Shown one piece after another: positions 5,802-56,314 of a stretch of 64,000 nt of DNA. The position numbers and the translations under genes were made by a program. The DNA lies in IMG/VR virus record IMGVR_UViG_3300009703_004110, positions 1 through 64,000 of that record; one strand, 5' to 3'. Each line of letters opens with the position of its first letter. The first letter of the stretch is position 1. Below the pieces are notes generated by a model. That model saw only the letters and a program-made list of their open reading frames with translations. It had not been told where the DNA came from and did no database searches.

Positions 5802-6749
5802 TTATACGTCGAAGTCGATTTCTCCACCAGTATAAGCTATCTCTCCCTGCCACTCAAATGGCCCAAGACTTAATGCGCTGTATTGACCGGCATATTGAGA
5901 GATGCCTGGATACTGAGACGGCCAGTCAATGCCGGCGACAATCTCTTCCAGAGACTCTTTGTGCTTGGCCGTTAGACCGGGGTTCTCTTGCTTCCCACCT
6001 GATGGCTCCGCAACTACTGAGCCAGGAACAGGCTTAGCATTGGTGTCCAACTTAAAGGCAAACTGATAGTTCTTAGCCTGACCTTCAGTTACTTCGTATG
6101 GTAAGCCGAAGCCTTCCGCATTATCATAAAACGGAGACTGCTCGCCAAGCGCTATATATCTCTTATAGAAGTCTTGCTGCTCTCTTGCTGGGTCAGCTGC
6201 TGCAACTACAGTTTTTTTTTCAGCCGATTTGAGAAGTTCATCTATAGTGAGCATGGCTTCAGCCACCGGAGAGCTTCCAGGCTCGCCAGAGAGTCCCTCT
6301 ACACCCCAAGCTGTATATGGCTTAGGCTCCTCTCCTCTCATTTCAGAATAGACGTCTCCACCCAAGTGTAACTGCTGAAGACTTTGTACAATCGGTTCTA
6401 ATTGAGCCAACTGAGCCTTTTCTTCTGGTCCGCCCCATCCCTCATCGATCATATCCTTAAGAGCCTGAACACCCGCCAAAAGATCTTTAACCTTTTCAGT
6501 CGCTTCTGCCTCTAGGTCTCCGCCGCTTTCGCCAGCTAACGGCTCTTCGCCCGGAAGCCCCTCTTCAAGAGGCTCCTCTCCGAATGCTTCTACGGCTGCT
6601 TCGTCCATGCTATCAAAAGGCGTCTGTGAGGCTGTATCGTCCCACTCATCTAGCGCCTTCTTAGCTAACCGATCTGCTATATCCGCTTCTTTGGTAAGTC
6701 CTGCGGCATCCAGATCGTTAGCCAACTTTAATAATTTAACGTGAATCAT
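5802..6749 (-). CDS. Acidic protein with the shared N-terminal leader; putative virion protein
   Basis: KLLKLANDLDAAGLTKEADIADRLAKKA leader; GGAG RBS. Confidence 0.75.
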   Translation of the reverse strand: MIHVKLLKLANDLDAAGLTKEADIADRLAKKALDEWDDTASQTPFDSMDEAAVEAFGEEPLEEGLPGEEPLAGESGGDLEAEATEKVKDLLAGVQALKDMIDEGWGGPEEKAQLAQLEPIVQSLQQLHLGGDVYSEMRGEEPKPYTAWGVEGLSGEPGSSPVAEAMLTIDELLKSAEKKTVVAAADPAREQQDFYKRYIALGEQSPFYDNAEGFGLPYEVTEGQAKNYQFAFKLDTNAKPVPGSVVAEPSGGKQENPGLTAKHKESLEEIVAGIDWPSQYPGISQYAGQYSALSLGPFEWQGEIAYTGGEIDFDV

Positions 6750-6759
6750 TATATCTCCA

Positions 6760-7458
6760 TCACTTTAATCTAGTTAGATTTTTTAGTCGTTTATCTGGAT
6801 TACGCCAGTCCATTCTGGACAGCCACCATTCAACATAAGCCTCTTTATCGAGACCAAAATCAGCAAAGTAAGCGTGCTCCCACATATCAAGTGCCGCAAT
6901 AGGGACACTGAAGATTGGAACACCAATTTCGTGCAGGTCAATGACGTCGATGTAAATCATCTTTGTCTTAATGCAATAGTTAACCAGTACCCAACCATTA
7001 CGAGTAAGCTTAGCTGCTCGGGTCAAATCTTTGGTAAAGTCTTTGGCACTTCTAATATATAAGTCACCAAGGTTACCGCTAAGAAACTTAGCTTTTTCCA
7101 TTGGCGTTGGTCTGCTATCATAAACATCTTCAAAATACATTTCATGAAGAAAAACTGCGTTCTCTGCATTGGAGGTACCACGTTGTACTTCGCGAAGCTT
7201 GCCGTAGGCTGGAGTATCTTTCTCATTAGAAGAAAGCAGAGTTTTCTTCTTTTCTTTGGTCAAAGACTCTAGTGCTTTCTGGTACATCTCTGCTAATTCA
7301 TGATGAGCATTGACTGTACTTTGTTGTACACCGCTCTTATGCATTTCAACCTTGGCAGTTTTACGCATATATGTATCAAGAATGTCCACCTCGCTGGACA
7401 TTCCTTGCTCGTCAATACGTGCCAAAGCGTGCAATACTTCTTTAAGATTTTCGCTCAT
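6760..7458 (-). CDS. Fe/Mn superoxide dismutase family protein with leader
   Basis: LDMWEHAY (DxWEHAY) and NAVFLHEMYF motifs; start moved to MSENLK at 7458 (GAGG RBS). Confidence 0.85.
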   Translation of the reverse strand: MSENLKEVLHALARIDEQGMSSEVDILDTYMRKTAKVEMHKSGVQQSTVNAHHELAEMYQKALESLTKEKKKTLLSSNEKDTPAYGKLREVQRGTSNAENAVFLHEMYFEDVYDSRPTPMEKAKFLSGNLGDLYIRSAKDFTKDLTRAAKLTRNGWVLVNYCIKTKMIYIDVIDLHEIGVPIFSVPIAALDMWEHAYFADFGLDKEAYVEWWLSRMDWRNPDKRLKNLTRLK

Positions 7459-7693
7459 ATTTGAACCTCTACTATGTTTATCTTTATTAGTAAAACCAAT
7501 CAAACCATTTATACTTGACGGAACATCCCTTTGCTGGTTAAAAGCCTGGGACGCGATAGGCTTCCCCCGCCCGTTAAAGGCTCCTGGGGCCCCTCAGCAC
7601 TCCCGTATAATAAAACTAAGGCCCTCGTACTGGAGCGGGATACAAGTCACAGTCAGCGGACCTTACAGGGCCTGCATATCAATGCCAAATTGA

Positions 7694-10567
7694 TTACTCC
7701 TCTTCTTCATTGTAAACCCAGGTCTCTTCGGGCAGGTAGATTGTTTCCGATGGATCTTCATCTTCATCACTTGGTAGGAATTCGGATGGAGTTATCCCCT
7801 TCGGATGTCTATTTGAAGGATCAAAGTATACTGGTGTATCACCTCTGTATCCCAGGTTTCCACTGTGAACATCTGTATTATCGGAGATTAACTGAAATAT
7901 CATTGATCGAACAATATCTGGCAACCAGCCCTTGGGAAGAGAAAGTCTTCTTTCTGCTTCTTTAAATACAGGCATAACTTCACCGTATAGACTTGAGCCA
8001 ATAAACTCGCCCACTAAGCCGTTAGTAAAAGTTTCTATATCTTTCATATCAGAATCAGGACCTGGTTTATTAGGTGCCCTCTGGAATGCACCACTGACAA
8101 CAACCTCATTTTGAGAATTTCTTTTGCCACCAAAATATACATTTAGCTTTCCAAAGGCTTTCTTAAATTCTCTCAATAATGACTTAGTTATATTAGACTC
8201 TTCTTTGTCTTCTATGTTCAGATATTTAGCCAAGTCTTTTAGCTGGTCATCATAAGATTTAACCATACTTCTGATTGGATTTAATTTCTCGATTACAACC
8301 CACGACATATTTCTTAGCTTCTTAACATCATATGGCTTCTTAGCTAATGGCACATCGAATATGCCATAGTCGAAAACCATTAGATTGTACTTGCTTCCCT
8401 TCTCTGGATCATGAACAGCTGCCGCCTGTTCTTTGTAATAGTCTAGGTCTTTATCATTAGACATAAGCTTAATCACACGATCATCTTCTGTAGTCCAAGC
8501 ATCGGCATAGCTACCAGATCCAAGAAAGTTTGTAGGCTTGTATCGTTCTAAGACGTCGGCGTTTCTGTTTAAGAAGTCCTTTACCCAGATCTCTTTACTT
8601 TCCCTGCTCTTCTCACCCTTAAACGAAGAAAACATTTCGCCTACTAAATTACCTATCACGGTTTCAGCGGAAAATATCTTACCGTACTCGCCAAACTCTC
8701 CCACTCTTTGTGGAAGTAAGTGCTCTAATCCGTATTGCTTGGCAAGCTCGGGAGTTAATATAGTCTCATCATAAGCGAAGTTTTCTCTGGCTCCATAATC
8801 TAGGTTTCTTCTGATTGGGCCAAGGGCGCTAGATAGAATAGTTTTAAGTCTATTTAGCTTCGCAGTCTTATCCCAGTCTCTAATTTCTGTATATTCTTCT
8901 GGTGCCTCATAAGCTGGAGACGGATTGTATGCATCAAAGAAGACCGGTGTAGTTCCGCGATAGCCCATGTTTTCTGGCTTAGTATCTCGGTGACCTCTAG
9001 TTAGAGACTTGAAGTTAGAAATCATAAAATCTTCAATCCATGATTTTTCTAGGCCATAGTGCTCTATGCCAGCGACTCTTAGTCTTTCTACTGAAAAATA
9101 CTGCTTGCGTCTCGAAGGCCTCTTCATCCATCTTTCGAAATGATGATTAATTCTCTTATCAACTAAGAATTTCGCAATATCTTCGTCAGATGTACTTCTC
9201 GGGATCTCGTCAGAGCCAGAAAGTATTTTGCTCATTGCTCTGGCAAAATCTGATACATAGCCAAGAAGATGATCAAGCGTAGGCTTACCTTGATAGGGAC
9301 TAAATCCAGGCTCTAAGAACTTCCTTGGTGTCTTAAGCTCTTCTGTAACTACCCATCCAAGATCAAAATGCTCTTTCATGTTTTCTTTAATTTCGCGCCC
9401 ATCTAAGCTTAATGGAAGATCTGGCATCCTAAATGGACCAGAATCATAAACTCTAAGGTCTCTCTTATCTCCAGTCTCAGGGTCAAAGGGCACGTCCTCA
9501 AGTCTTTTATATTCTTCCAAGGCTCCGAGCCCACCAAAGATCTTAAAGACTCGTCCATCCTCTAGCTTATAAGCGTGACCATGGGCTCCTGCACCAATGC
9601 TTTCTACTGGCATATACTCTGTAAATATGTCTGAATTAATATCTATGAACCTTTCGATAAAGGCTGCCGGGTTAGTATAGTTTTGTGACAGTTTTAACAA
9701 TGGCTCGGACTGCTCGATTAAATCAAATTGTGGCATTTCACCAAATAAATCATCAGCGTCATTTTGGCCAGGACTAAACGGATCAAAAAATACGGGAGTC
9801 TCGTTTCGATATCCGAGATTCTTAGAACCCAGGGTATCTACTCGTCCTTGTAACATAGAGTACAATAAAGCAATAATGTAGTTCTTTACAGTCTTCGAGC
9901 CCTCTGGAGAATCGTAGCCTTCCGGCTGGACTTCTTCTAATGGATAGAAGGCAATGAATCCTTGGTAAATTATATCTGCTGCTTTAGCCAGATTATCGGA
10001 AGTTATTTCCTTGATAGAGTCTGGATCAAAATTATAAGTGATATAATCATAGATGTTTCGATAGAATTCATCTTCACCAATCCCACCTTGATTCGGTAAG
10101 TATTCCGTTAGAGCCCATCCTAAGAAATCCACTCCTTTTTGCTCTGGAAGCTCGAATTTACCAAAGTCATAAATCTGAATGGTAGATTGTGTAGCGGCTC
10201 CCTGATAAAGCTTGTCAGTTTCTTCCTGATAGAAGCTCATTAGTTTTGGCTCATTAAAGAGCTTCAAGACCCTGCTGTCATCAGTGAGGTAAGCTTCGCC
10301 ATCCGCACCACCTCCAAGTCGTTTAACTGGGGTATGGATAGAGAAGATGGCAGAGTTCAGATCTAGAAATTTTCCAACCCATTGTTCTGCGATATTTTCA
10401 TCCATACCCTGAAGCATACTACCGAATAAGGGCGAATTCTGCACGAGATCAAGTCCAGGCATAATGCCCGAAGATAACTTATATAATGAAACAAGCTCCT
10501 CATCAAGGGACTCTTCTGTTAAGAGCTTTCCAAGATTATATAGTTTATTTGCTATCCTCGTCTTCAC
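7694..10567 (-). CDS. Protein with three tandem protein-kinase-like domains
   Basis: Three sets of G-loop + VxK (LGGGADG/VLK, IGAGAHG/VFK, LGSGSYA/VIK), catalytic loops (VDTLGSKN, HRDTKPEN, TDVHSGN) and (F/Y)FD. Confidence 0.85.
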   Translation of the reverse strand: MKTRIANKLYNLGKLLTEESLDEELVSLYKLSSGIMPGLDLVQNSPLFGSMLQGMDENIAEQWVGKFLDLNSAIFSIHTPVKRLGGGADGEAYLTDDSRVLKLFNEPKLMSFYQEETDKLYQGAATQSTIQIYDFGKFELPEQKGVDFLGWALTEYLPNQGGIGEDEFYRNIYDYITYNFDPDSIKEITSDNLAKAADIIYQGFIAFYPLEEVQPEGYDSPEGSKTVKNYIIALLYSMLQGRVDTLGSKNLGYRNETPVFFDPFSPGQNDADDLFGEMPQFDLIEQSEPLLKLSQNYTNPAAFIERFIDINSDIFTEYMPVESIGAGAHGHAYKLEDGRVFKIFGGLGALEEYKRLEDVPFDPETGDKRDLRVYDSGPFRMPDLPLSLDGREIKENMKEHFDLGWVVTEELKTPRKFLEPGFSPYQGKPTLDHLLGYVSDFARAMSKILSGSDEIPRSTSDEDIAKFLVDKRINHHFERWMKRPSRRKQYFSVERLRVAGIEHYGLEKSWIEDFMISNFKSLTRGHRDTKPENMGYRGTTPVFFDAYNPSPAYEAPEEYTEIRDWDKTAKLNRLKTILSSALGPIRRNLDYGARENFAYDETILTPELAKQYGLEHLLPQRVGEFGEYGKIFSAETVIGNLVGEMFSSFKGEKSRESKEIWVKDFLNRNADVLERYKPTNFLGSGSYADAWTTEDDRVIKLMSNDKDLDYYKEQAAAVHDPEKGSKYNLMVFDYGIFDVPLAKKPYDVKKLRNMSWVVIEKLNPIRSMVKSYDDQLKDLAKYLNIEDKEESNITKSLLREFKKAFGKLNVYFGGKRNSQNEVVVSGAFQRAPNKPGPDSDMKDIETFTNGLVGEFIGSSLYGEVMPVFKEAERRLSLPKGWLPDIVRSMIFQLISDNTDVHSGNLGYRGDTPVYFDPSNRHPKGITPSEFLPSDEDEDPSETIYLPEETWVYNEEEE

Positions 10568-11451: not shown

Positions 11452-11474
11452 AACTGAAGTAAAATAGGTACTAA

Positions 11475-11510: not shown

Positions 11511-11521
11511 GCTTTGTCTGA

Positions 11522-12094
11522 TTATTTCTCTTGAGATGTTTCTAATAGCTTTACCAACTCAATATAAGATGGATAGTGTGCCTTCTTAAGAAAGGATGCC
11601 AAGTGGCTCAATTTCTCCATCTTCCATGAATCAGGAAGTAGACCATGAAGTTCGCCTGGAGTCTCTGTGTGCTGTAATTGAACAAATTGAATTTTATTAT
11701 CCGGGTATTGTTCCTGAAGATAAGTAAACTCAAAGTTGTCATCATCGAAATGAAGTTCTGAGCCAATCTCTTGTAGCTTATGTGCCTTGTCATTACCTAC
11801 AAAAATTAGCTCTTTAAAGTGTTATAGCATACCATTCGCTTGTAGAAATTCGATAACTTCGACACGATTTTCTGGTGAGTCCTTTCTGCTGGTAACCATG
11901 TATAATGTAGTGCCAGCTGCAGACAAGCGTGTGATAATATCTTTGATAATCGGAGACATTCTATGTCCAGTTACTTCATAATTAGCCCAGTCTTCTGGCA
12001 CTCGATAGATGTTAAATTGCAGAGTATCATCGAAATCAAAGCTCGCCATAGCGGGCGGGCTGGCCATAATTGATTCGATTAACTCTGCGCTCAT
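11522..12094 (-). pseudogene. HAD-superfamily phosphatase interrupted by an in-frame TAA at 11822-11824
   Basis: FDFDDTL (motif I) and VTSR (II) precede the stop; the same frame continues with NDK (III) and LHFDDD (IV) to a TAA at 11522. Confidence 0.75.
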
Positions 12095-19187: not shown

Positions 19188-19430
19188 TTATTCCGGAGCT
19201 TCTCCCAGGCTGTCACCCAGCGCGGTAAAAACCTCTCTCAGGATCTTCAATTCTTCTTCCGGTATTTCTATCGAATCCGGCAGACCTGTTGCTCCCTCTA
19301 AGTTAATATCATCAAGAGCGCCTACTTCTGCTTTTTTATAAGCGATAATTAAATTGGTTACAAAATCTGCATCCTCGGCCAATCCCGCCCTGTCTAAATT
19401 ATCTGCAATCTTTACTAATCTTTTAATCAT
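19188..19430 (-). CDS. Small protein consisting largely of the shared leader
   Basis: MIKRLVKIADNLDRAGLAEDADFVTNLIIAYKKA; GGAG RBS before 19430. Confidence 0.7.
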   Translation of the reverse strand: MIKRLVKIADNLDRAGLAEDADFVTNLIIAYKKAEVGALDDINLEGATGLPDSIEIPEEELKILREVFTALGDSLGEAPE

Positions 19431-25866: not shown

Positions 25867-26044
25867 TATTTAACCTCGTTCGTAAAGAAATTAATTGCGT
25901 TATTATGGTATCTAGATGTTCTTTCTTCAAAGTTACAGATATTAAATAACTTTCTTTACCTTGCTTTGTTTTAATACCCATTCGGATGGCATTGCCATCT
26001 TTTTCGATAATCATATAACTATCTGAATTAAGTGTTATTTTCAT
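25850..26044 (-). CDS. Hypothetical protein
   Basis: Start at MKITLN, ATGA-coupled to the lysozyme stop. Confidence 0.6.
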   Translation of the reverse strand: MKITLNSDSYMIIEKDGNAIRMGIKTKQGKESYLISVTLKKEHLDTIITQLISLRTRLNNVEED

Positions 26045-26712
26045 CCGGTCCCGCCCTTCCACATTGCCGCCTCTGCGGCTCTCCTTTTTTGGTGACCAGG
26101 AGAAGAAACAAATGCCACTGGTATTAGATTTCCAGCACCAGTTAAATCGCCTGAATTAATTAACTTCAGAAGTTTTGACCTGGAGATTGTTCCAACTCCA
26201 GTGTTGTATATTATACTAACTAATGCATTAACTTGATTGGTATTTAATGGCGTTGTCACATTTCTCTTAATAAAGCCGAGAACTTTATCCATGTCTTTAG
26301 TCAGATACTGATCGGCCTGTGATTTGGTAATTCTCATTGGACTAGTTTGCCCAACTTTACCGTGCCTATGACCATATCCAATTGCCCACCAACCACCATC
26401 ATCATATGATTCCAATCGAAGGCCTTCAAATTTCTTAATCATATTAGCGCCCTCCTGATCATAAGCGGCTTCCGCATTAGGATCTGGAACTTCTATTATT
26501 TGGCCGATCTGTAATTTAGTCCAATCAAGATCAGGGTTTGCATTCTCAATCATTCTTTGATAAACTGGATTACCACCAGAGATACTCCAGGCCGTATCTC
26601 CCGATTTGATTGTATATGTTTTTGCTGTTTTCAAAAAAGAAAAGAGAAGACGGGCCTCTTTATGAAGCCCCTCTTCTCTTAAATATTGGTATAAACCTTC
26701 TAGCTTTTTCAT
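26041..26712 (-). CDS. Leader + LysM + GH24 lysozyme
   Basis: YTIKSGDT...LQIGQIIEVP (LysM); IKKFEG...YDD...IGYGH and RRAAE (GH24). Confidence 0.92.
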   Translation of the reverse strand: MKKLEGLYQYLREEGLHKEARLLFSFLKTAKTYTIKSGDTAWSISGGNPVYQRMIENANPDLDWTKLQIGQIIEVPDPNAEAAYDQEGANMIKKFEGLRLESYDDGGWWAIGYGHRHGKVGQTSPMRITKSQADQYLTKDMDKVLGFIKRNVTTPLNTNQVNALVSIIYNTGVGTISRSKLLKLINSGDLTGAGNLIPVAFVSSPGHQKRRAAEAAMWKGGTG

Positions 26713-33198: not shown

Positions 33199-33199
33199 T

Positions 33200-36915: not shown

Positions 36916-36917
36916 TA

Positions 36918-38822: not shown

Positions 38823-38823
38823 T

Positions 38824-39120
38824 CTATCTCCGATATTTGTATGGATTTGGCGTATCGCCATATATAGAGTCTATAGTGTTTTGGTTGCCAGCCTTTATTT
38901 TGTCTACAGTTTTTCTAACGCCTTCTTTGATTTCGTCGATTATCTCGGAAGAATCTTTGTCGACTTTATTGGAAATACTGCCTAGCTTATGAAATAGTAC
39001 CCCGTTCTCGCACTGCGAACACTCTTTTTTTTCTTTCTTCTTTTTCACGAACTCAGATATGGTCATGTTCTGAGTGCCTATAAAATCACATTCTGAGCAT
39101 CCAAAAGTATATTTAGGCAT
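38824..39120 (-). CDS. FmdB-like zinc ribbon protein
   Basis: MPKYTFGCSEC...CSQC. Confidence 0.8.
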   Translation of the reverse strand: MPKYTFGCSECDFIGTQNMTISEFVKKKKEKKECSQCENGVLFHKLGSISNKVDKDSSEIIDEIKEGVRKTVDKIKAGNQNTIDSIYGDTPNPYKYRR

Positions 39121-44114: not shown

Positions 44115-45523
44115 ATGTTTGGACAACTTGATGCCCTATATTCTATATTGATAATCGAAGGCTTATATTCTGAAGCTTTAGATCTTTTATGCTTAGTCAA
44201 GGAAGCAGGAAGTTCAAAGATAATAAGTGATTATGAAGAAGGCGAAAGTATGGGGCGTAGTGGAGAAGGTCGTCAAAGTATGTCTCCGGAAAAAAGAGAG
44301 TTTCTTTGGGACCTAATAGAAGCTATTTTAACACATCTTGGAAAATCTCTCGATACAGTTAATGGTACTGACTTTGTTCCTTCTGGCCTTAAAGCTACTA
44401 GATATACTGCCATAGCAATAGACTTACTTCGTAACCCTGATATTAAAGCAGTCGCTGATCAATATAATTTTAATATGAATATAAAAATCATGTACATAAT
44501 GAAGGCTATTAGTTTTATTGCAATGGACATTGTTAAAAAAATGTATTTGAAAAATCCATCTATACCGCTTAAAGAGGCCAAAGAGAGACTTGCAGAGCGC
44601 GGATTTTTATACAGCACAATTACAGCTGTTCGTTTTCTTAAACTCGCGCCCGATTATCAAAATATATATTTGGTAGAACGTGACTTTGAAGATGCTTCAG
44701 AATCATTCTTACTTAGATATGCAGAGAAGCTTGCTGAGCAAGACCCAGAAGCTCCCGTAACAGCAAAAGAATAATTGATAGCTTTATTACTGAATTTCCA
44801 GAGCAACCAATAGATCCTGCAAATGCAATTCGTGCAGCAATTGTATATAAAAATAAGGCGAGTCAAAACTATGAGCCAATGATTTTATCGATTATTATGG
44901 AATCTCTAATTGGCGGCGATGGAAAAATAACTGCCGACAAACTAATGGAGCAATTTTATAAAAAGTATCCTAATGCCATTAAGAGACCAAAGACCTGGTT
45001 CAATGCATTTTTATCCGATCTTAAAAAACATTTTAAAACCTTTATTGCCGATATTATTATGCAGTTAATAGAAGAGGGCGTTTCAACTACCTCTATATCT
45101 TTATATTTATCTACCGCTTTAAACTATAATATTACACAAGCAAATGTTAGTCAAATATCTAAAAAGTTACTATCTGGTACGCCTCTTCATAAAAAGCCTC
45201 CAAAAACTGAGTTGCAAGATACAGTTAATTTTGAAAAAAGAAGAACCATGGAAGATGTGGATGCAAAACGAAATATTCTAAATCAAAGATTAAATAACTT
45301 ATACAATAATATGATTAATGAATATCAATCACCAACTACAAACCAGCCTAAAGACTTTGTTGAGATCTGGATAAAACGATATCAATATTACATTAATGAA
45401 GCAATAACTAATGTTGGATTACTTCCAGAACAAGCTGATGATTTGGTTTTAGAAATCATTGACAAAATTCGTGCTAAATTGCAAGCTATTGAATCGGCTC
45501 ATAGCCAATCTCAGGATGTTTAA
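44115..45523 (+). pseudogene. Leader-bearing protein split by an apparent -1 frameshift (ORFs 44115-44774 and 44879-45523)
   Basis: The second ORF's frame is open from 44738; adding one A at GCAAAAGA joins the two ORFs. Confidence 0.6.
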
Positions 45524-45548: not shown

Positions 45549-45854
45549 TTATATCAGTCCAAGCTTCTTGATTAATTTCTGAGCGTCTTTTGAAACTTTT
45601 GCGTGTACTTTTGCCGGATCAAGAAACGGACCCTTAGAGCCCTCTCTGATGCGTATAACGTCCATCGCTAAAACATAAAATATATAATCAGTTCCAAGCA
45701 ATTTATACCTGCCTTTCCACTTTGGAGCCGCTCCATATCCGGCAGTTACATCTTTTAACCTAGTAAATAACTTCGAATCATTAATTGCTCTTTGAGCAAT
45801 GGATACTGAAGGCTTTCTTTGTCTGCGTCTCGCACCTGCGCCAAAAATACTCAT
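45549..45854 (-). CDS. Hypothetical basic protein
   Basis: 101-aa ORF ATGA-coupled to the helicase. Confidence 0.65.
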   Translation of the reverse strand: MSIFGAGARRRQRKPSVSIAQRAINDSKLFTRLKDVTAGYGAAPKWKGRYKLLGTDYIFYVLAMDVIRIREGSKGPFLDPAKVHAKVSKDAQKLIKKLGLI

Positions 45855-48316
45855 TTCTCGTTCCTCTTGATTTTGAAACCAGGCTCTGATGAATATATTC
45901 TGTATCTAGCCTGACTATGTTCTCTTAGATATTTACAGTTATCATAGAAGTCTACAACTGCTGCATTGATCTTTCCTTCATTACGTCTGATAACTCTTCC
46001 AATTCTTTGAAGAGCCCTGGCCGTCGACTTACCGGAGCCGGCCAAAATAAGAGCGTCTAACTCAGGTATGTCAATGCCTTGGTCAAAAATACGAGAAGCA
46101 ATCATGACATCTAAATCCCCGTCTCTCATCTGGCGGATAGCCTTCATGCGGTCCGCTGTGGAATTCATACCGTTGAGACTATTGACCTTCAAATTGGGAT
46201 CCAAAAAATCTTGAATCACTTTTCCGTGGTCAACCTTCGTCACCAGAATCAAAACCTTTCTTCCGGCATCTGACATTTTTTTAGCAACTTCTGCAATTTT
46301 GAAATTTCTATAATCATTGTTAACAATAAAGTTATTGTATACTTCTGGATAAGTTTTGCCAACGCCCCTGATTGTTGGAATGTTTATAAATGTAATGTAC
46401 GGCCTTACTAACCAGTTGGTGTCTATTAGTTCGGTCGCAGTAATGTCACAAAATTTTGGCCCGCTAACAGCTTCTATCAGAATGTCGTCGCCATTTTCTC
46501 GCCACGGCGTACCCGAAAGCAAGAACCTATGTCTAGCGGAAGCTGACTCTTTATGAAGAAACTGCACTGTCTCGGCCGCTGCATATTGGCATTCATCAAG
46601 AAAGAAAAGCTCTGCAGATCGGACAAGGTCTTTGACCGCCTCTCTCTTTTGCATATTCTTTGTAAGTGCCTTGCCCTTCGTACTATCTGAATCTAAGAGC
46701 TTAACTTTCTTGTTGAATGCCGAAGCAGCAGACCATATGGTTACAATGTTAATCCCATCCACTATGTCACATTGTCCATCGCCTACGATTCCACACTTTA
46801 CGCCAAGTGATTCTTCTATGGTTGACTTCATTTGATACAGTAATTCTTTTCCAATAACATAAACCACTGTTTTGACATTGTAATGTCCGGCGATCATCGC
46901 AATGACCAGAGATTTACCAGAATTATGTGTTACTGTAAAGTCGTCTAATAAATATCTATTATCTCCATCTACTTGGAATCCAAAATACTCTTGAACCCCG
47001 GCTTCCTCATAGGAAAAGTCGGTCCTTAGTACGCTCTTCTTCTGAAGTCGCTTCTTAGCACGCTTTCTTGCTAGTTTTGTTGGAATAATACTGCAGTCTC
47101 CAGATATGCTAACTCTAAAATATGTTCCAGTAAATCCAGTCGTTCTAATGCTCTTTTCGCATTTTTTTATATAAGCGGCTAGGCCGATACTTCTGGATAA
47201 GAAGCATACATCTTCAGCTAATTTTTTTGATTTTGATATATAATCAAATCCACCGTGCGACAAAGATCCATCTGAATCTAATAATCCTGCCAATATAGCG
47301 AGCCTATCTATTTTAGAGGCTGTTTTGTATTTTGCCGGAATATACTTATTTTTAGAGCCTAACCCAAGAAGTTTTAAATCTCGTAACTCATTTCTAAGTT
47401 TATTTTTATACTTACCACTTCCTTTAAAATAGTAAGTTATCCCGTTCTTTCTTATTTCTAAATTATATTTTTTTGCTATAGTGTGTATATAATTTGATAT
47501 AACCTCATCTGCTGTCGTTATTCCAACCTGACCTTTTAAGCTTCCATCACCAAGCAAAAGACCTAAAAAATATGGATCGGTAGCCAACTCTTCCCTTGCT
47601 TTAAAATCAATTGGTACCCTGAATAATTTATGAATATGCTTAAATGTCTTACTTTTATTCTCCCAATCAGAAAACTTTATATCTATTACATCGCCATTAA
47701 ACTTATTATTTATAGTTTTGTTTGTTCTTTGTAACGACAAAACATGTTCTTGGTTTATAATAAAACTATCGCCCTTTACAGGGTTTATTTTAACCATTCT
47801 GTCAGTTCCGGCACAAAGCTTTAGAACCATTCTAGGGGCACTATCCGGTCCCATTAGGCGATCACCAACCATGATATTTTCTACGGCTTTAATAGAGCCG
47901 TCATACATTAAAATCCCTTGGCCTTTAGCATGGCACCCGGTAGCTGCACGTAGGATTCCGCTTTCGGCTTTGATTGCCGCTTCCACAGCAGATATCTGAT
48001 AGTCTCTCGGAATAAAAACACTGCTTGGGTCAATAGCTATCGAGCTTCCATATTGTAAAGGATCACGCTGATCCACTATCTTATATTTGTACTTATTAAC
48101 TTTTAGGATGTTCTCAACCACATGAAGCATACCGATTGGGAATACACCATTTCTCTTGTTAAAGAGGCGGTATCTTCCGTCCCATCCAGTATGCTTTTTC
48201 ATGAACTGATAACTCTGCACCATATAACTAAGGTGCTTGTCAAGCTCACGCAGGACCTTCCCATCAGACAGGCCTGTTAGCTGACACTTTGAGTTATTTA
48301 CATAAATAGTGAGCAT
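45851..48316 (-). CDS. SF2 DExD/H-type helicase (UvsW-like), intein-containing
   Basis: PRDYQ, AATG|SGKS, DECQ, SGTP, QGIDIP, QRIGRVIR; start at MLTIY. Confidence 0.92.
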   Translation of the reverse strand: MLTIYVNNSKCQLTGLSDGKVLRELDKHLSYMVQSYQFMKKHTGWDGRYRLFNKRNGVFPIGMLHVVENILKVNKYKYKIVDQRDPLQYGSSIAIDPSSVFIPRDYQISAVEAAIKAESGILRAATGCHAKGQGILMYDGSIKAVENIMVGDRLMGPDSAPRMVLKLCAGTDRMVKINPVKGDSFIINQEHVLSLQRTNKTINNKFNGDVIDIKFSDWENKSKTFKHIHKLFRVPIDFKAREELATDPYFLGLLLGDGSLKGQVGITTADEVISNYIHTIAKKYNLEIRKNGITYYFKGSGKYKNKLRNELRDLKLLGLGSKNKYIPAKYKTASKIDRLAILAGLLDSDGSLSHGGFDYISKSKKLAEDVCFLSRSIGLAAYIKKCEKSIRTTGFTGTYFRVSISGDCSIIPTKLARKRAKKRLQKKSVLRTDFSYEEAGVQEYFGFQVDGDNRYLLDDFTVTHNSGKSLVIAMIAGHYNVKTVVYVIGKELLYQMKSTIEESLGVKCGIVGDGQCDIVDGINIVTIWSAASAFNKKVKLLDSDSTKGKALTKNMQKREAVKDLVRSAELFFLDECQYAAAETVQFLHKESASARHRFLLSGTPWRENGDDILIEAVSGPKFCDITATELIDTNWLVRPYITFINIPTIRGVGKTYPEVYNNFIVNNDYRNFKIAEVAKKMSDAGRKVLILVTKVDHGKVIQDFLDPNLKVNSLNGMNSTADRMKAIRQMRDGDLDVMIASRIFDQGIDIPELDALILAGSGKSTARALQRIGRVIRRNEGKINAAVVDFYDNCKYLREHSQARYRIYSSEPGFKIKRNEK
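46922..47935 (-). mobile_element. Intein with LAGLIDADG endonuclease in helicase Walker A
   Basis: G|CHAKGQ...LAGLLDSDG...VTHN|S; 338 aa. Confidence 0.93.
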
Positions 48317-48376
48317 GCGTTCTCCATACCTAGATTTTACTCTAGGCACGAAGAAATGCTTGAATTTATATGTAAA

Positions 48377-49002: not shown

Positions 49003-50424
49003 TTATCTTCTTCTCCTTCTCTTATCAATTATAGACTTTCTAGCTCCGCCCTGTAGACGATTAAATCCAGACTTCTTTTTCTTGATCTTTTGGTGGACTT
49101 TGTCTGCCATACTGGCAACCTTATCTTCCTCAAGGTCTAGCGTCATTTGTGAAGCCCTTGCCTTATCCTTGCCAGCAGCCACAGAATCTTGTGCTCTGCT
49201 TTCTTTGCGAAGATTTTCAATTCGATCCTGTGGTAGGCCGAGACCCGCGAACCACGTATAAATACGAATCTTATCTTCTGTCATATCAGGATCAGAGTAG
49301 ATACCCTGAAAGACGTTTGCCCCATTTGTTTCTTGCGAAATCATATGGAAACAATAGTCTATATTGACCGCAGGAAGTTCGTTTAATGCCTCCTCTGGCC
49401 CAACAATTATTACTCCGCCGGTACGTGTCTGAGTAAGATTGAATCCTTCTGCTAACATATTCCCGCTTAAACTTTCAATTACTGCTTCAGCTAAAGCTGT
49501 TTCTTCTAAGTAATCAGCTACTTCAATCATTCCGTATACAGAGCAGTCACCGCATGAAATTATTTTACCAAAATCAGATGGGTCCAACGATGTGTGACGT
49601 GATGCTTGAGCAGTTTTAGTATTGAATAGATGCAGTGGCTCTACAATTGCTGCGTTAGCAGTAGTCCAAAACTGAGCCTGTCCTAATCCTCCGTAGATAT
49701 TTTCAATTCTTGCATTATCTACGACGACAAGTGAAGAAATCATATTATCGGTTGTCTGGCGAGCAAGCCTCGCTAGCGTTTCGATTGCATTCTTTTTAGA
49801 TTGCGCATCCTCTGTCGCCTTCGGAAGAACATAAATAACTCCCACCGGCATTCCTAATTCAAATAACATTGGAATCATTGTGCTAACAGAGCTAGAGCCT
49901 GTTCCGCCTCCGCCAGACATGGCCAAGAAAATCATATCATTTCCATCGGCTATTCCGTCTACGAAGTCTCTCACAATATTTTCGCTTGCTTCAAATATTT
50001 CTCGTCCAAGATCTAGATCCTTACCTGTTCCGCCTAAACTTCCTTCCAAAAGAAGCTTTTGCGACGGTAGGACGTCAATAAACTTTAAGTCCTGAGCTGA
50101 CGTATTAATTACGCCCGCATCATAACCACATCTATGAAACTCTTCTGCGATCCTTGATCCGGCTTGGCCTACACCAACAATGCCTAAATTAATGCTAACT
50201 TCTTGGCTGGCAACTACGTCCATCATTGGTTCCTCCTTTGCTGCGCTAGGTTCATCAGTTCCTTCTTTTTTTGCTTTAAGTTTTGCTAAGATATCTGGAT
50301 TCATACCAGTACTCTCCTTTTCTTCGCTTGCGAAAGCTGCAAATAGATCCTGGTTATCTCGTGATACCTTGTCTTGTGATTTATTGCTTTCAATACGTTC
50401 TTTGGTTATTTTTACTTCTGACAT
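49003..50424 (-). CDS. Tubulin/FtsZ-family GTPase
   Basis: VGVGQAGSRIA, GGTGKD, GGGTGSS, VVDN, LDPSDF. Confidence 0.9.
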   Translation of the reverse strand: MSEVKITKERIESNKSQDKVSRDNQDLFAAFASEEKESTGMNPDILAKLKAKKEGTDEPSAAKEEPMMDVVASQEVSINLGIVGVGQAGSRIAEEFHRCGYDAGVINTSAQDLKFIDVLPSQKLLLEGSLGGTGKDLDLGREIFEASENIVRDFVDGIADGNDMIFLAMSGGGGTGSSSVSTMIPMLFELGMPVGVIYVLPKATEDAQSKKNAIETLARLARQTTDNMISSLVVVDNARIENIYGGLGQAQFWTTANAAIVEPLHLFNTKTAQASRHTSLDPSDFGKIISCGDCSVYGMIEVADYLEETALAEAVIESLSGNMLAEGFNLTQTRTGGVIIVGPEEALNELPAVNIDYCFHMISQETNGANVFQGIYSDPDMTEDKIRIYTWFAGLGLPQDRIENLRKESRAQDSVAAGKDKARASQMTLDLEEDKVASMADKVHQKIKKKKSGFNRLQGGARKSIIDKRRRRR

Positions 50425-52137: not shown

Positions 52138-52156
52138 CTTTATTTTTCCGTGAGAA

Positions 52157-55100
52157 TTATAGCGTTATACCAAGCATATTATTGTCAACAATAACAGATA
52201 ATCTATATATCCTTTCTGAGCGAGATATTTTTGCCTTTTTCTTTTTGATTTTAATTTTTTGCTTGAATTTTGGTGTAGTTAAATCTATACTACTGCGCGG
52301 AGACCAATCTGTTCGGCCTTGATATTTATATTCATATACAAAATCTCGTGGATCGCATCTGAGACTTTTTTTCTTAAATCTGTCTGGATCCAACTTGGTA
52401 AATCTCTTTCCACAGAGCACATATTTTGCTCTAAGTTTCGATTCTACGTGGGTCGCCCAAGCCGCATACATGTCGTCCATAGAATACCCAATGTGATATT
52501 CTGCGCCTCGTCCATATAAAGATGCCTCAACATTATCTAAAATATATCCATGATCTGATTGTACATAATGAAAATAACTTTGAGAGGCTATTTTCCAGCC
52601 AACTTCGGTATTGATCTCTAAGATTAACACTCCAGCTAGCGGATTCACATAAGAATCGATAGCCGCATTTTTGCCGACACCATTAATATGCTGGCAACAA
52701 CTTGTTTCTAGACCAATACTGAAGTGCAATGAATCATAAGTTCTAAGGGTTCTAAATCTAAATTTCTGTCCAATGGGCGCCCAATCAATCTTGTGAATAT
52801 CTGGCGATTTAATTTCTGTTTCTTCGTTATACTCAGAATACTCTCCAAACTCCTGAACACTCTTGAGGTCTGATAGGGCCGTTTCAATGAACCGCTTGTT
52901 TTCTTCAAAGTCTGGTTGCCCTGGCACTAACTTTGGTGGATTATTGCACAAAGTTATTAGCTTCTTAACTCTAGCGCCAAAACCTCTCTTAATATATCCC
53001 TGTTCTACCATAATTTTAGCCACAGGATATATTGTTTCCATTATTTTTCTATATCCACCAAGCCTCTTTAGTTGAGCACATGCTTCAAAGTATCGTCCGA
53101 CCAAGTGAATCTTTCCCCAGTTTTTAAAGTTCTGGCTCTTGAGCATATTTGCAAAGAAAGACTTTGGAAGACCTTCACCGCGATTATGGACAAAAGCGGC
53201 CATTCTAATAGCGGCACTTATCTTCTTTTTAAAGTTTCCCGGCACGCTTATTAGCGTATCTGGGAAATAAGTTTTAACCTCTTCGTACCCTATATTTCCT
53301 TCTGCGGCTCTCCAAGTTTGGTCCAAAACATTTCCCATTTCGATAAAATTATTATAGCTTGTAATACCAAGTACTTTGGCAGTTACTAATTTTGCATAGA
53401 ACATCGGAGGCATATCTCTAGGTTTTTTAGAGACCTCCCTATAAAACTCACTAACATCATCAATTGGATAAAGCTCGGTCATATCTGAAATTTTAGACGG
53501 ATACTCCATTTCTTTTGCCTTACCTTTTATCATTTCTTTGGCCCATACACTTATAGGGATGCCTTCGAGCCACGGCTTACCTTCGAGCGCTTTAAACTTT
53601 TTGAGGATTGTTCTTGGACCTACCGCTTTAAAAATCTGCCCTCTTTTTTTAGCTAATAACCTGTAGTTAACTTCTGCATGCATGAGTCTAAGCTCTTGGG
53701 CCAGATTTGGCAACGAATTTTTAATAAATGTTAGTTCTTTATTAAATCGAATGTTTCGTTCTATTTCTTGTCTAACTTTACCTAATATCTCATTAGTTCT
53801 TCGTTTTTTATCTTCTTCTCCGAAGGCGTACTCTAACTCTTTGTCTATAACGGCTTGAATGCTTTCATCAGGATATTGCTCAGGTAGTAATTCAAGTTCC
53901 GATGTTGTCTTAATAAGCCCTTCTAAATCTTCGCCTCTAAAAGGCTGTCTTGAGAAATAATCTTTATTAAAAATACTAGTCCCTCTATTTTCATTTCTTT
54001 TATTTATAATATTGACTAAGGAGCTTTTTATATTTTTATGGATCTTTTCTAAATGTCTCGGCTTATCATATCTTCTTACATTTCTAAATCCAGATGCCAT
54101 CCATCTATCAAAATCTTTTATCTCATTATTGAATCTGTTATAGCGAGTTTCTTCTTCTTCATTTATATTTCCATCTAAAAAGTCAGAAATTAACCTTTCT
54201 TTAGAAAAATAATTGTGACTGACTAAATTTGTAACACTGGAATATCTCTCTTCTAGTGCAGTAACCTGATTCATTTCTTCTTTGGAATCTCTATATGGAA
54301 GTTCTCTAACTGAGGCAAAGACCATTTTCTTTTTTAAAACAGTAATTAATCTTGGTTTTAAAAACTTCTTCTTACTCAGAATATGCGTGGTGATATCTGC
54401 GATGTCTCTGCTTTTTATAGTTATATATCCTCTTTTGATTAACTTTTCTAATTCAATATTGAAATTATCATCTAAAGAACTTAATGATCCGGTAATTGTA
54501 TCTACAATTTTTTCTCCAAGAATTTGTGAGCTAGTAGACATCATATCGCCCGAAAGAGTTTTATCTTTAAACAAGAATTTTGGATAATTAAGTGCTGATA
54601 TATACAAAATTCTATTTTCTGGATCAAACTTAGTCCAATTAGATACTAGTGACTTTGCAACTTCAGGAGATATGTTAGACCCCCTTAGGTCCTCTACACT
54701 ATATCCCGTTGCTTCTCTGATAACTTCATCTATTATAATTTTTGAAGCTTGATCTCTAGCAGGTTGAAGAATTCTCTTAGTAACATCACTAACCACACTA
54801 TTAAATATATCAGATATTAAATATGCAAAGTTTTCAATAATGGAGATCTGAGTATGTTTGCCATGTAAAATAGATATCAGATTAAATTTCTTTAAATTTT
54901 CTTCGTCTGATCTTCTGTAACTATCAGTTTTATAAAATCCTGACTGATTATGATAATAAGAATAACCTGTTGCTATATCCTTTTCTTTTTCAATTTCACT
55001 GGCAAATAAAAGATATTTTTCATGTATTTCATCTTGCATATGCTTTATCACGCTATTTGCTATACGCGCTCTAGCTCCGCTTTTACTTTTCAGTACTTTG

Positions 55101-56314
55101 TTAAGTTTCTTTTTAAATCCCTTTAGAAATCTCTGGCCTCTCTTGACCGATGCTAACGTTCTATCTAAAGAATCGTCATAACTGTCCAAGTTATTATATT
55201 TTCTTGAAAACCAATAAGATATAGTAGATTTTTGTGAAATAGAGTAGCTATACACATTAACTGCGACTTCATTTTTAAAGCTCGGAGCCTCTTCCAGATA
55301 TTCTTTCATAAGCGCTGGATTATCAAACCAACCTTCCTCTAGATTGTCAAAAAATCCTTTAAGGCCCAGTCTGCTCCAGTCGTCCCCTCGGCCTGTTGAA
55401 GCGCCAAAGATAGATATGCCAACAGAATCTATAACAATCTTGTATATTTGGTGGTAAAGTCTATTAGATAAATCTTCGACCATTTCATCATAGCCTTTAA
55501 AGTTCATGCTTTCTGGTGGCAGTGGCTCAGATGCTGCTTGTGAAATCTTAATATCATCTAGAATGGTAATTATTTGCGTTCTTTTTTGTGATATAGAGAG
55601 GTACTTAGAGTAAAGCTCTCCAACCATCTTCCTATATTCTTCTCTATCAATATTATAATCGACTTGAATATTTTCTGGCTTTAATTTCTGGCGATATCGA
55701 TAATTACCTTCTTCAACGTAATCATATCCGGGAATATTCATCTTTTCGTAATTACTTGGATTACGCCCTTTCTCTGCAATAAATTCCTCTAGTTTCTCAC
55801 GATATAGTTTTCTTTTTTCGGTCCATTCATCCTCCAAGGCAGCTCTTTCTTCTTCTAACCGTCTAGGATCTGGAAGTATACGAATCTCGGGCGGCATATC
55901 GGGAATTGAAGTCTGTGCCTGCTCCAAGTTATATGAGGGAATTTGTGCTTTTAACTCTGGATATCTATCTCTATATTCTTTTATTGTAACCAAGAATTCT
56001 GTATGATCAGCAGGAATTGACATAACTTCTTGCGCCAACTCTTCTTTACTTCTATCTGGGTGACTTCTCATTAAAACCTGAAGAAGCCTATTCCTCATTT
56101 TTCTCTGATCTTCCGGAATATAAACTTCTTGACTAGTAGGCCGAGGGCCTGCCTCACTCATTTCCGGCACGACCTCTGGCCGACCTTCTTCCGTTTCTTC
56201 ACGCACTTCTTCAAACAACTGAAGCTGCTCTTGAGCAAGCTTAAGAAGATAATTATATTCTGAATAAAAACCATTAGTTTTTAGATATTCTGCAAGTCTG
56301 CGAATATCGGTCAT
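52157..56314 (-). CDS. 1385-aa leader-bearing protein; putative internal virion protein
   Basis: MTDIRRLAEYLKTNGFYSEYNYLLKLAQ leader; C-terminal domain IGLETSCCQH...YILDNVE. Confidence 0.75.
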   Translation of the reverse strand: MTDIRRLAEYLKTNGFYSEYNYLLKLAQEQLQLFEEVREETEEGRPEVVPEMSEAGPRPTSQEVYIPEDQRKMRNRLLQVLMRSHPDRSKEELAQEVMSIPADHTEFLVTIKEYRDRYPELKAQIPSYNLEQAQTSIPDMPPEIRILPDPRRLEEERAALEDEWTEKRKLYREKLEEFIAEKGRNPSNYEKMNIPGYDYVEEGNYRYRQKLKPENIQVDYNIDREEYRKMVGELYSKYLSISQKRTQIITILDDIKISQAASEPLPPESMNFKGYDEMVEDLSNRLYHQIYKIVIDSVGISIFGASTGRGDDWSRLGLKGFFDNLEEGWFDNPALMKEYLEEAPSFKNEVAVNVYSYSISQKSTISYWFSRKYNNLDSYDDSLDRTLASVKRGQRFLKGFKKKLNKVLKSKSGARARIANSVIKHMQDEIHEKYLLFASEIEKEKDIATGYSYYHNQSGFYKTDSYRRSDEENLKKFNLISILHGKHTQISIIENFAYLISDIFNSVVSDVTKRILQPARDQASKIIIDEVIREATGYSVEDLRGSNISPEVAKSLVSNWTKFDPENRILYISALNYPKFLFKDKTLSGDMMSTSSQILGEKIVDTITGSLSSLDDNFNIELEKLIKRGYITIKSRDIADITTHILSKKKFLKPRLITVLKKKMVFASVRELPYRDSKEEMNQVTALEERYSSVTNLVSHNYFSKERLISDFLDGNINEEEETRYNRFNNEIKDFDRWMASGFRNVRRYDKPRHLEKIHKNIKSSLVNIINKRNENRGTSIFNKDYFSRQPFRGEDLEGLIKTTSELELLPEQYPDESIQAVIDKELEYAFGEEDKKRRTNEILGKVRQEIERNIRFNKELTFIKNSLPNLAQELRLMHAEVNYRLLAKKRGQIFKAVGPRTILKKFKALEGKPWLEGIPISVWAKEMIKGKAKEMEYPSKISDMTELYPIDDVSEFYREVSKKPRDMPPMFYAKLVTAKVLGITSYNNFIEMGNVLDQTWRAAEGNIGYEEVKTYFPDTLISVPGNFKKKISAAIRMAAFVHNRGEGLPKSFFANMLKSQNFKNWGKIHLVGRYFEACAQLKRLGGYRKIMETIYPVAKIMVEQGYIKRGFGARVKKLITLCNNPPKLVPGQPDFEENKRFIETALSDLKSVQEFGEYSEYNEETEIKSPDIHKIDWAPIGQKFRFRTLRTYDSLHFSIGLETSCCQHINGVGKNAAIDSYVNPLAGVLILEINTEVGWKIASQSYFHYVQSDHGYILDNVEASLYGRGAEYHIGYSMDDMYAAWATHVESKLRAKYVLCGKRFTKLDPDRFKKKSLRCDPRDFVYEYKYQGRTDWSPRSSIDLTTPKFKQKIKIKKKKAKISRSERIYRLSVIVDNNMLGITL

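What the first reader, a model, noticed from the sequence alone, without database searches (positions are those of the whole stretch)
5802..56314. Shared ~30-aa N-terminal leader on seven unrelated proteins: candidate virion-cargo sorting and cleavage system
Seen in the sequence: the N-termini align to L-x-x-L-x-x-x-L-x-x-x-G-[LMF]-x-x-E-x(3)-[hydrophobic]-...-K-x-[AS]. The instances are KLLKLANDLDAAGLTKEADIADRLAKKA (6749), EVLHALARIDEQGMSSEVDILDTYMRKTA (SOD, 7458), KLYNLGKLLTEESLDEELVSLYKLS (triple kinase, 10567), RLVKIADNLDRAGLAEDADFVTNLIIAYKKA (19430), KLEGLYQYLREEGLHKEARLLFSFLKTA (lysozyme, 26712), QLDALYSILIIEGLYSEALDLLCLVKEA (44115) and DIRRLAEYLKTNGFYSEYNYLLKLA (1385-aa protein, 56314). 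In the lysozyme the LysM domain starts right after KTA, and in the SOD the recognisable domain follows KTA, so the leader behaves as a detachable module. A similar helix (KLSHLASFLKKAHY...LVKLL) sits at the C-terminus of the interrupted HAD gene. Established: T4 internal proteins use an N-terminal capsid-targeting sequence removed by the prohead protease, and phiKZ-like phages cleave head-protein propeptides at short motifs. Inference: this is a portable address tag that loads enzymes (kinase, SOD, muralytic enzyme) into the head for ejection into the host, with cleavage after K-x-A.
Basis: partly seen in the sequence, partly recalled or inferred. Interest (0 to 1): 0.88.

Follow-up and report, generated by a model that had tools for sequence, protein, structure and literature searches.

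The report
Portable two-helix tag on jumbo-phage proteins
A 32-residue two-helix module starts at least five unrelated proteins in this stretch of an uncultured marine jumbo phage; it belongs to a large, undescribed, virus-only family of end tags, is also built into head-assembly proteins of the same phages, and so most likely docks accessory proteins into the forming capsid.

Summary
All seven N-termini read as quoted and each start has a Shine-Dalgarno motif. Against a profile built only from proteins outside the window, five leaders (6749, 19430, SOD 7458, lysozyme 26712, 56314) score far above every other ORF N-terminus. 44115 is linked through the lysozyme leader. 10567 and the HAD C-terminal helix are at background.

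The leader belongs to a strongly conserved 32-residue helix-turn-helix family (consensus MIKELIKLANHLDKKGLTKEADYLDSLIKKA). A search of 1.84 billion proteins gave 156 hits, about 70% at residue 1. In IMG/VR loci it sits on about 141 unrelated proteins: 78% N-terminal, 15% C-terminal, the rest repeated or internal. It is absent from cultured phages, Pfam, PHROGs and PDB. In 596 Gb of prokaryotic genomes it occurs only on four short MAG contigs.

All carriers share one TerL/portal core, a clade of 220-420 kb marine phages. The same hairpin lies inside a conserved protein between portal and prohead protease. It also ends an 867-aa protein two genes before the capsid gene of this phage.

Best reading: a procapsid-docking tag, analogous to the T4 capsid-targeting sequence and the P22 scaffold hairpin. 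Packaging is inferred, not shown. Cleavage after K-x-A has no support.

The parts
6642..6749 (-). Canonical tag, residues 1-36 of the 315-aa protein 5802-6749; an acidic low-complexity linker follows
   Evidence: External HMM E 5.5e-11; hhalign 98.3%; the ortholog in a 335-kb relative keeps a canonical tag; no Pfam domain in the cargo
19323..19430 (-). Canonical tag, residues 1-36 of the 80-aa protein 19188-19430
   Evidence: External HMM E 1e-11; hhalign 98.2%
7351..7458 (-). Diverged tag at the N-terminus of a Fe/Mn superoxide dismutase (6760-7458, start at the ATG at 7458)
   Evidence: hhalign 94.7%; HMM E 1e-3; the ortholog's tag is closer to consensus, 96%; Sod_Fe_C at residues 137-222; Shine-Dalgarno motif before 7458
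26617..26712 (-). Diverged tag at the N-terminus of a LysM + phage-lysozyme protein (26041-26712)
   Evidence: hhalign 91.6%; LysM begins at residue 33, Phage_lysozyme at 93-214
56213..56314 (-). Diverged tag at the N-terminus of an orphan 1385-aa protein (52157-56314); an acidic linker follows
   Evidence: hhalign 84.9%, score 24.5 against a null maximum of 12.0; no homolog found for the cargo
44115..44216 (+). Probable strongly diverged tag on the 219-aa protein 44115-44774
   Evidence: hhalign score 16.0, full length and in register; BLASTP E 4e-6 to the lysozyme tag; as part of the 4-sequence profile A7, 94% to the family
10460..10567 (-). N-terminal helices of the 957-aa repeat protein 7694-10567: membership not demonstrated
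   Evidence: hhalign 12.5, at null level; the ortholog's N-terminus is conserved but not canonical; a domain homolog, L037:1450-2445, carries a true tag (94%); no direct alignment to that tag
11525..11614 (-). C-terminal helix of the HAD-like fragment: not a member
   Evidence: hhalign score 9.9, probability 1%

Best explanation
The leader is one copy of a 32-residue helix-turn-helix docking module. Helix 1 covers about residues 2-14, the turn is at an invariant Gly16, and helix 2 covers about residues 18-31. L5, A9, L12, D13, G16, E20, A21 and D25 are nearly invariant.

One clade of uncultured marine jumbo phages (220-420 kb) attaches this module to either end of many unrelated accessory proteins, usually through a disordered acidic linker. 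The same hairpin is a fixed part of conserved head-module proteins. I therefore infer that the free tags bind the same partner as those proteins, or bind the hairpins themselves, inside the assembling procapsid. Tagged enzymes would then be incorporated into the head and delivered with the DNA. In this window these are a lysozyme, a superoxide dismutase and proteins of unknown function. In relatives they include cell-wall hydrolases, an ArdC-like protein, a methyltransferase and a lipase.

Shown: the family, its boundaries, its terminal position, its virus restriction, its cargo diversity, and its homology to head-module hairpins.

Inferred: binding to the procapsid, packaging and ejection.

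Not supported: obligatory proteolytic removal.
For: Family and N-terminal position:
- 156 hits with E<=1e-3 in 1.84e9 proteins; 101 of 145 non-window hits start within 12 residues of the N-terminus, at a mean protein length of 234 aa.
- The module boundary at position 32 is sharp and is followed by an E/D/G/P-rich linker.
- In 1.15 Mb of IMG/VR loci, 230 ORFs carry the module: 180 N-terminal, 35 C-terminal, 15 internal. The 180 unique proteins fall into 141 unrelated cargo families.
- Cargo domains include LysM, PG_binding_1, Hydrolase_2, GDSL lipase, a second Fe-SOD, a methyltransferase and ArdC-N.

Virus restriction:
- Only 4 short MAG contigs in 596 Gb of prokaryotic genomes hold real tags.

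Fold:
- AF2 models a natural two-tag protein as four helices, two hairpins, with pLDDT 88 and pTM 0.73.

Link to the head:
- In 79 loci chosen by portal homology alone, tag hits fall at three fixed places, one of them 0.5-2 kb after the portal.
- That protein family (fam13) matches the tag profile at 96%, E 4e-9, with 34 columns in register.
- In this phage fam13 lies in the order TerL, portal, 81 aa, fam13, 95 aa, DUF192, protease-like 1165 aa, then further genes, 867 aa, 220 aa, capsid protein.
- The protease assignment is a lead.
- The 867-aa protein ends in a tag (91.5%, E 9e-7).
- Hypervariable tagged genes sit in a fixed slot before fam8-TerL-portal, and one 223-kb phage has an array of 12 consecutive tagged genes.

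Precedents:
- T4 internal proteins are diverse and share only a capsid-targeting sequence (PMC3012670).
- The N-terminal 30 residues of P1 DarB suffice for packaging (PMC9024508).
- Residues 271-300 of the P22 scaffold form a U-shaped helix-turn-helix bound to the inner procapsid (PMC9965877).
Against: - There are no virion data. The clade has no cultured member (TerL at most 25% identical to any GenBank phage; no tag or DQHG match).
- The function of fam13 and of the 867-aa protein is inferred from gene position only. Pfam, PHROGs, PDB sequence and fold searches gave nothing.
- In this window the tagged genes lie among replication and metabolic genes, not in the head module.
- Some family members contain hydrophobic stretches or Gly/Arg-rich linkers between several tags. 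This fits a membrane or cytoplasmic assembly as well.
- A LysM lysozyme could simply be the endolysin.
- The core DQHG protein carries tags in most relatives but none in this phage, so tagging is not tied to one fixed partner.
Confidence: 0.5

Rival explanations
1. The hairpin is a general self-associating docking module. It gathers tagged 'client' proteins around multi-tag 'scaffold' proteins in an intracellular or membrane-associated viral assembly, such as a factory, a condensate or an envelope complex, not in the virion.
For: Natural proteins carry 2-3 tags separated by Gly/Arg/Pro-rich or hydrophobic linkers (P0001, P0002). The two hairpins of P0038 are modelled as one compact four-helix unit. 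Tagged genes in the window lie among replication and metabolic genes. This phage encodes a tubulin-like protein (weak hit).
Against: The only conserved non-accessory carriers of the hairpin that could be placed lie in the head morphogenesis module. No compartment-forming gene was recognised. Self-association is inferred from an intramolecular model only.
Confidence: 0.25
2. The tag binds a host component, for example to route proteins to the envelope or periplasm or to a host machine. This would explain why several cargos act on peptidoglycan.
For: LysM-lysozyme, LysM-Hydrolase_2 and PG_binding_1 cargos recur. The conserved acidic residues D13, E20, D22 and D25 suggest a specific polar interface.
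Against: The tag is not hydrophobic and resembles no signal peptide. Cargos also include cytoplasmic-type enzymes (SOD, methyltransferase, ArdC-N, PilZ). The hairpin is embedded in conserved head-module proteins that need no routing. No cellular protein carries the module.
Confidence: 0.1
3. The tag is a propeptide removed by the prohead protease after K-x-A.
For: A gene resembling a prohead protease lies in the head module (atlas lead at 0.91 to S78/S77/S80 clusters). Conservation drops right after K-K-x-A. T4 and phiKZ-like phages do this (established knowledge; PMC3012670).
Against: No conserved residue follows position 32. An [AGS]-x-E motif is not enriched by column (E 0.15 at position 34). 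C-terminal, internal and tandem copies exist. The hairpin inside fam13 is modelled as part of a five-helix domain.
Confidence: 0.1
4. The similarity is chance among amphipathic N-terminal helices.
For: Two of the listed instances (10567 and the HAD helix) are at background. Leave-one-out with six sequences is weak for four leaders.
Against: Five leaders score 2-4.7 times the null maximum against an external profile. There are 156 database hits at E<=1e-3, 70% of them exactly N-terminal. Eight positions are 88-97% conserved.
Confidence: 0.02

Closest known systems
T4 capsid-targeting sequence (CTS) of internal proteins IPI-III and Alt
   Same: A short N-terminal element shared by otherwise unrelated, hypervariable accessory proteins. 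The genes cluster in variable arrays. The element is portable in principle (PMC3012670).
   Different: About 10 residues against 32. No sequence similarity. The T4 CTS is always N-terminal and is cut by gp21. Here 15% of copies are C-terminal, some are tandem, and no cleavage motif is conserved.
P22 scaffolding protein C-terminal helix-turn-helix (residues 271-300)
   Same: A helix-turn-helix of about 30 residues at a protein end. It anchors a protein to the inner procapsid surface and is usable as a cargo-loading tag (PMC9965877; PMC9962691 listed). Here an 867-aa head-module protein ends in the tag.
   Different: No detectable sequence or fold-search relationship. In P22 one protein carries it. 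Here well over a hundred protein families do.
P1 DarB N-terminal packaging signal
   Same: An N-terminal signal of about 30 residues is sufficient to direct a protein into the capsid, and the cargo is an anti-restriction enzyme (PMC9024508). An ArdC-N protein and a methyltransferase are tagged in relatives.
   Different: It is known on one protein and is not a shared family. No sequence relation was tested or seen.
Propeptides of phiKZ/SPN3US-type giant phage head proteins
   Same: Jumbo phages that load many proteins into the head and have a prohead protease (PMC5694885, PMC10052503, listed).
   Different: Those propeptides are defined by cleavage motifs and are not a common folded module. 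This clade is unrelated by TerL.
Encapsulin cargo-loading peptides and microcompartment encapsulation peptides
   Same: Short terminal tags joined by flexible linkers to diverse enzymes, directing them into a protein shell (my own knowledge).
   Different: Different sequences, cellular systems, a single short helix or an extended peptide. Not tested here.

Membership tests
New tag family (consensus MIKELIKLANHLDKKGLTKEADYLDSLIKKA) | In-register match to a profile built only from non-window members | tested here: met
   Met for 6749, 19430, 7458, 26712 and 56314 (scores 24.5-56.8 against a null maximum of 12.0). Marginal for 44115 (16.0). Not met for 10567 (12.5) or the HAD helix (9.9).
New tag family | Sits at the extreme end of the protein and is followed by a collapse in conservation or a linker | tested here: met
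   All window copies start at residue 1-5, with a Shine-Dalgarno motif upstream. Family-wide boundary at position 32.
New tag family | Helix-turn-helix fold | tested here: met
   AF2 of the two-tag protein P0038 gives H2-14/H18-30 and H35-48/H52-66, pLDDT 88. The fam13 hairpin is H70-86/H90-106 with pLDDT above 90. No window tag was modelled itself.
T4-type capsid-targeting sequence | About 10-residue N-terminal sequence ending in a gp21 site (L/I-x-E) | tested here: not met
   The module is 32 residues long and no conserved L/I-x-E or other site lies at its end.
T4-type capsid-targeting sequence | Sufficient to load a foreign protein into the prohead; removed on maturation | not testable with these tools
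   Needs a cultured host-phage pair or a reconstituted procapsid.
Scaffold-type coat-binding helix-turn-helix (P22 gp8-like) | Terminal helix-turn-helix of about 30 residues on a protein encoded in the head module | tested here: met
   The 867-aa protein two genes before the capsid gene ends in the tag. fam13, encoded after the portal, holds it internally.
Scaffold-type coat-binding helix-turn-helix (P22 gp8-like) | Sequence or structural homology to solved scaffold domains | tested here: not met
   Profile against PDB sequences: nothing below E 0.03, and no scaffold protein. Foldseek against PDB and BFVD: no hit with E<=1e-3.
Scaffold-type coat-binding helix-turn-helix (P22 gp8-like) | Binds the coat protein inside the procapsid | not testable with these tools
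   No multimer prediction tool is available. Needs an experiment.
phiKZ-type prohead-protease substrates | Conserved [S/A/G]-x-E cleavage motif after the propeptide | tested here: not met
   Position 32 is A/S/G in 65% of copies, but position 34 is E in only 15%.
Any curated family (Pfam, PHROGs) | Significant profile hit over the tag | tested here: not met
   No family covers the tag in any window protein or in 250 tagged proteins.

The most novel reading that the evidence does not exclude
The hairpin is a homotypic 'sticky' unit of a genetically encoded scaffold-client system. Multi-tag proteins and the hairpin-bearing head proteins would form a multivalent core, and dozens of single-tag clients partition into it. 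The phage could then swap its injected proteome simply by moving a 96-nt cassette. On this reading the tag census of a metagenomic genome directly lists the proteins the virus delivers into its host.
Probability: 0.2. Interest if true: 0.85.

Novelty: new variant of a known kind. Interest (0 to 1): 0.72.

Why it matters
If the tag is a procapsid-loading signal, it lets the injected or virion-borne accessory proteome be read straight from sequence for a whole clade of uncultured 220-420 kb marine phages. That is dozens of proteins per genome, most of them of unknown function. The likely first-minute weapons would include wall hydrolases, SOD, an ArdC-like protein and methyltransferases.

It would also be a folded, 32-residue, end-independent cargo tag with a very clear consensus, which is attractive for loading proteins into capsid-based containers.

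Even if the destination is not the capsid, a virus-only docking module shared by more than 140 protein families is undescribed. It has no Pfam, PHROG, PDB or literature match, and it defines an interaction network that can be tested directly.

Tried and rejected
- Megablast of 10 kb of the window against GenBank phages: no match.
- tblastn of a consensus tag and of the DQHG protein against GenBank phages: none.
- Literature search for tag strings: only chance letter matches.
- Cluster names for ten tagged proteins: none informative.
- PHROGs or Pfam on neighbours and on conserved core families 0, 1, 2, 5, 8, 13 and 17: no hits. Family 21 gave only DUF192.
- Homolog searches for the 1385-aa and 957-aa proteins: only themselves.
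- Word-based search with a tag region: only 12 candidates.
- Atlas search on the DQHG protein: uninformative.
- Foldseek of the two-tag model and of the fam13 model: no significant hits.
- PDB profile searches for the tag, fam13 and fam19: nothing.
- The idea that the 95-aa gene after fam13 is a hairpin-less paralog that could receive tags in trans: rejected, no similarity.
- The idea that the tags are a DNA-level repeat or recombination cassette: rejected, DNA identity is low and the Gly codon varies.
- The idea that the DQHG protein is the universal hub: weakened, because it is tagless in this phage.
- tRNA and Rfam scans of the window: empty.
Full report
**Source.** The window is bases 1-64000 of IMG/VR contig IMGVR_UViG_3300009703_004110 (332,270 bp). 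The same phage occurs as a 420,521-bp ENA contig. The window is 37% G+C. It encodes replication and metabolic genes:
- PhoH, ribonucleotide reductase and a helicase, each with intein-like insertions.
- DnaB.
- A PrkA/YeaH/SpoVR-like trio.
- A sigma factor, a diadenylate cyclase and dUTPase.
- Glycosyltransferases and a weak tubulin-like protein.

No head gene lies in the window.

**Observation.** The seven N-termini are as quoted, and each start follows a Shine-Dalgarno motif.
- An HMM of the seven finds nothing else in the six-frame translation.
- Leave-one-out with six sequences is weak for four of them.
- A relaxed regex hits only five of these N-termini, against 0.44 hits in shuffles, but the pattern was made after the fact.

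**The family.** The decisive test was external. The 7-leader profile was searched against 1.84 billion representative proteins and gave 156 hits at E<=1e-3.
- Their sequences show a very tight consensus, MIKELIKLANHLDKKGLTKEADYLDSLIKKA.
- 101 of 145 non-window hits start within 12 residues of the N-terminus, although the proteins average 234 residues.
- Some proteins hold two or three copies.

Column statistics on 237 N-terminal copies give L5, A9, L12, D13, G16, E20, A21 and D25 at 88-97%. Conservation collapses after position 32, and an E/D/G/P-rich stretch follows.

**Membership of the window leaders.** All scores are against a profile made only of non-window members (A6).
- 6749 scores 56.8 and 19430 scores 54.9.
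- The SOD leader scores 31.9, the lysozyme leader 27.8 and 56314 scores 24.5.
- 44115 scores 16.0, full length and in register.
- 10567 scores 12.5.
- The best of 102 other ORF N-termini scores 12.0. The HMM ranking agrees.
- 44115 matches the lysozyme leader directly (E 4e-6).

A 335-kb relative (L018) is syntenic with window 5.8-10.6 kb.
- Its SOD and 6749 orthologs carry more canonical tags (96% and 98%).
- Its 10567 ortholog keeps a similar but non-canonical N-terminus.
- A domain homolog of 10567 in a 232-kb phage carries a true tag (94%), but the two leaders do not align.

The HAD C-terminal helix is at background. Similarity among the window tags is at the protein level only.

**Distribution.** A degenerate DNA pattern for the core motif found 111 stretches in IMG/VR.
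- In the 1.15 Mb fetched, 230 ORFs carry the module: 180 at the N-terminus, 35 at the extreme C-terminus and 15 internal.
- With the tag masked, the 180 unique proteins fall into 141 unrelated groups.
- Recognisable cargos are few and diverse: LysM, PG_binding_1, Hydrolase_2, GDSL lipase, cupin, another Fe-SOD, a methyltransferase, PilZ, EF-hand, ArdC-N and zinc ribbons.
- One 223-kb phage has 12 consecutive tagged genes.
- The same pattern in 596 Gb of prokaryotic genomes gave 55 stretches. Only four short MAG contigs hold real tags. The rest are chance matches, many of them a conserved motif in a roughly 380-aa Bacteroidota protein.
- No cultured phage has the tag. No Pfam, PHROG or PDB sequence covers it. 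No paper quotes it.

**One clade.** Loci with tags share a conserved block: GroEL-like, RecA, primase, two small genes, a 520-aa gene, a 'DQHG' protein, four further genes, a variable slot, fam8, TerL and portal.
- This phage has the same block, with TerL and portal about 69% identical to the others.
- TerL is at most 25% identical to any GenBank phage.
- The DQHG protein carries one to three tags in most relatives but none here.
- The slot just before fam8-TerL holds different tagged genes in different phages.

**Link to head assembly.** In 79 loci chosen by portal homology alone, tag hits fall at only three places. These are the DQHG gene, the variable slot, and 0.5-2 kb after the portal.
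- The third place is fam13, a roughly 180-aa protein whose most conserved segment aligns to the tag over 34 columns (96%, E 4e-9).
- AF2 models this phage's fam13 as a disordered N-terminal 68 residues followed by five helices. The first two helices are the hairpin.
- The ENA contig gives the head module of this phage: TerL, portal, 81 aa, fam13, 95 aa, DUF192 protein, 1165-aa protein, 201 aa, 231 aa, GIY-YIG, 125 aa, 867 aa, 220 aa, and a 337-aa protein with a weak Phage_capsid_4 hit.
- The 1165-aa protein resembles prohead proteases in a language-model search, which is a lead only.
- The 867-aa protein ends in a tag (91.5%, E 9e-7). It shares only that tag with another C-terminally tagged protein.

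**Fold.** A natural 67-residue two-tag protein is modelled as two helix-turn-helix hairpins in one compact unit (pLDDT 88, pTM 0.73). Fold searches return only generic TPR-like or designed bundles.

**Mechanism.** The anatomy is a terminal, sharply bounded, folded hairpin on a flexible linker. It is attached to many unrelated and fast-changing accessory genes, and it is homologous to a fixed hairpin of head-module proteins. This is what a procapsid-docking tag should look like. It parallels three known systems:
- the T4 capsid-targeting sequence;
- the P1 DarB signal;
- structurally, the P22 scaffold hairpin that sits on the inner procapsid wall.

I commit to that reading at about 0.5. Packaging and ejection are inferred. 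The main rival is a self-associating module that builds some other viral assembly. Multi-tag proteins with Gly/Arg-rich or hydrophobic linkers fit that reading equally well. Obligatory cleavage after K-x-A has no support from conservation or from the C-terminal and internal copies.

**Limits.** Only about 110 kb of this genome was read. fam13 and the 867-aa protein are assigned by position only. No multimer prediction or proteome was available.

Noticed in passing
L326:1749-13498 (head module of this phage, outside the window); also L062, L014 and L057: A second, shorter N-terminal motif (MKKISY, MKKESQY, MKKTAL, MRKLSWP, MIKKISxSP) starts several head-module proteins: fam0, fam13, the 95-aa protein, the DUF192 protein and the protease-like protein. 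It is absent from the window's ORFs.
   Followed up: partly
window 26747-29125, 29511-32675, 45851-48349: PhoH (with a PIN domain), ribonucleotide reductase and a helicase each carry large insertions. These hit intein/LAGLIDADG-type profiles that PHROGs labels 'terminase' or 'primase'. Free-standing HNH/homing endonuclease genes lie at 40914-42401 and 56386-57966.
   Followed up: no
window 33763-38861: A three-gene set resembling PrkA serine kinase (36918-38861), a SpoVR-like protein (35701-36915) and a third partner (33763-35205). It is shared with Thermus phages and huge metagenomic phages.
   Followed up: partly
window 1-4000: This stretch is 51% G+C against 37% elsewhere, with overlapping ORFs on both strands and no family hit. 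The same sequence is present in the ENA and Logan contigs, so it is not an assembly chimera. In the ENA contig a Ribosomal_L12 gene lies just beyond the window start.
   Followed up: partly
window 24701-25564 (+): A trypsin-like serine peptidase (Trypsin_2) is encoded on the opposite strand, about 0.5 kb from the tagged lysozyme. No link to the tag was tested.
   Followed up: no
window 7694-10567: The 957-aa 'triple kinase' has no kinase or other Pfam hit. It consists of internally repeated domains, since tblastn to its ortholog gives several offset alignments. A single-domain homolog occurs in a 232-kb phage.
   Followed up: partly
window 32644-33751 and 49003-50424: A sigma-70-type factor and a diadenylate-cyclase (DAC) domain protein lie side by side. 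Further on there is a weak tubulin/PhuZ-like protein.
   Followed up: no
L008:6707-7222, L095: In some relatives a MotA/ExbB-family gene and two small genes are inserted directly after the multi-tag DQHG protein, which there also has a hydrophobic middle segment.
   Followed up: no
L221:9935-10402 compared with L071:7349-8344: The conserved DQHG protein stops exactly where the first tag begins in relatives. Tags have therefore been gained or lost at a fixed junction of a core gene.
   Followed up: partly
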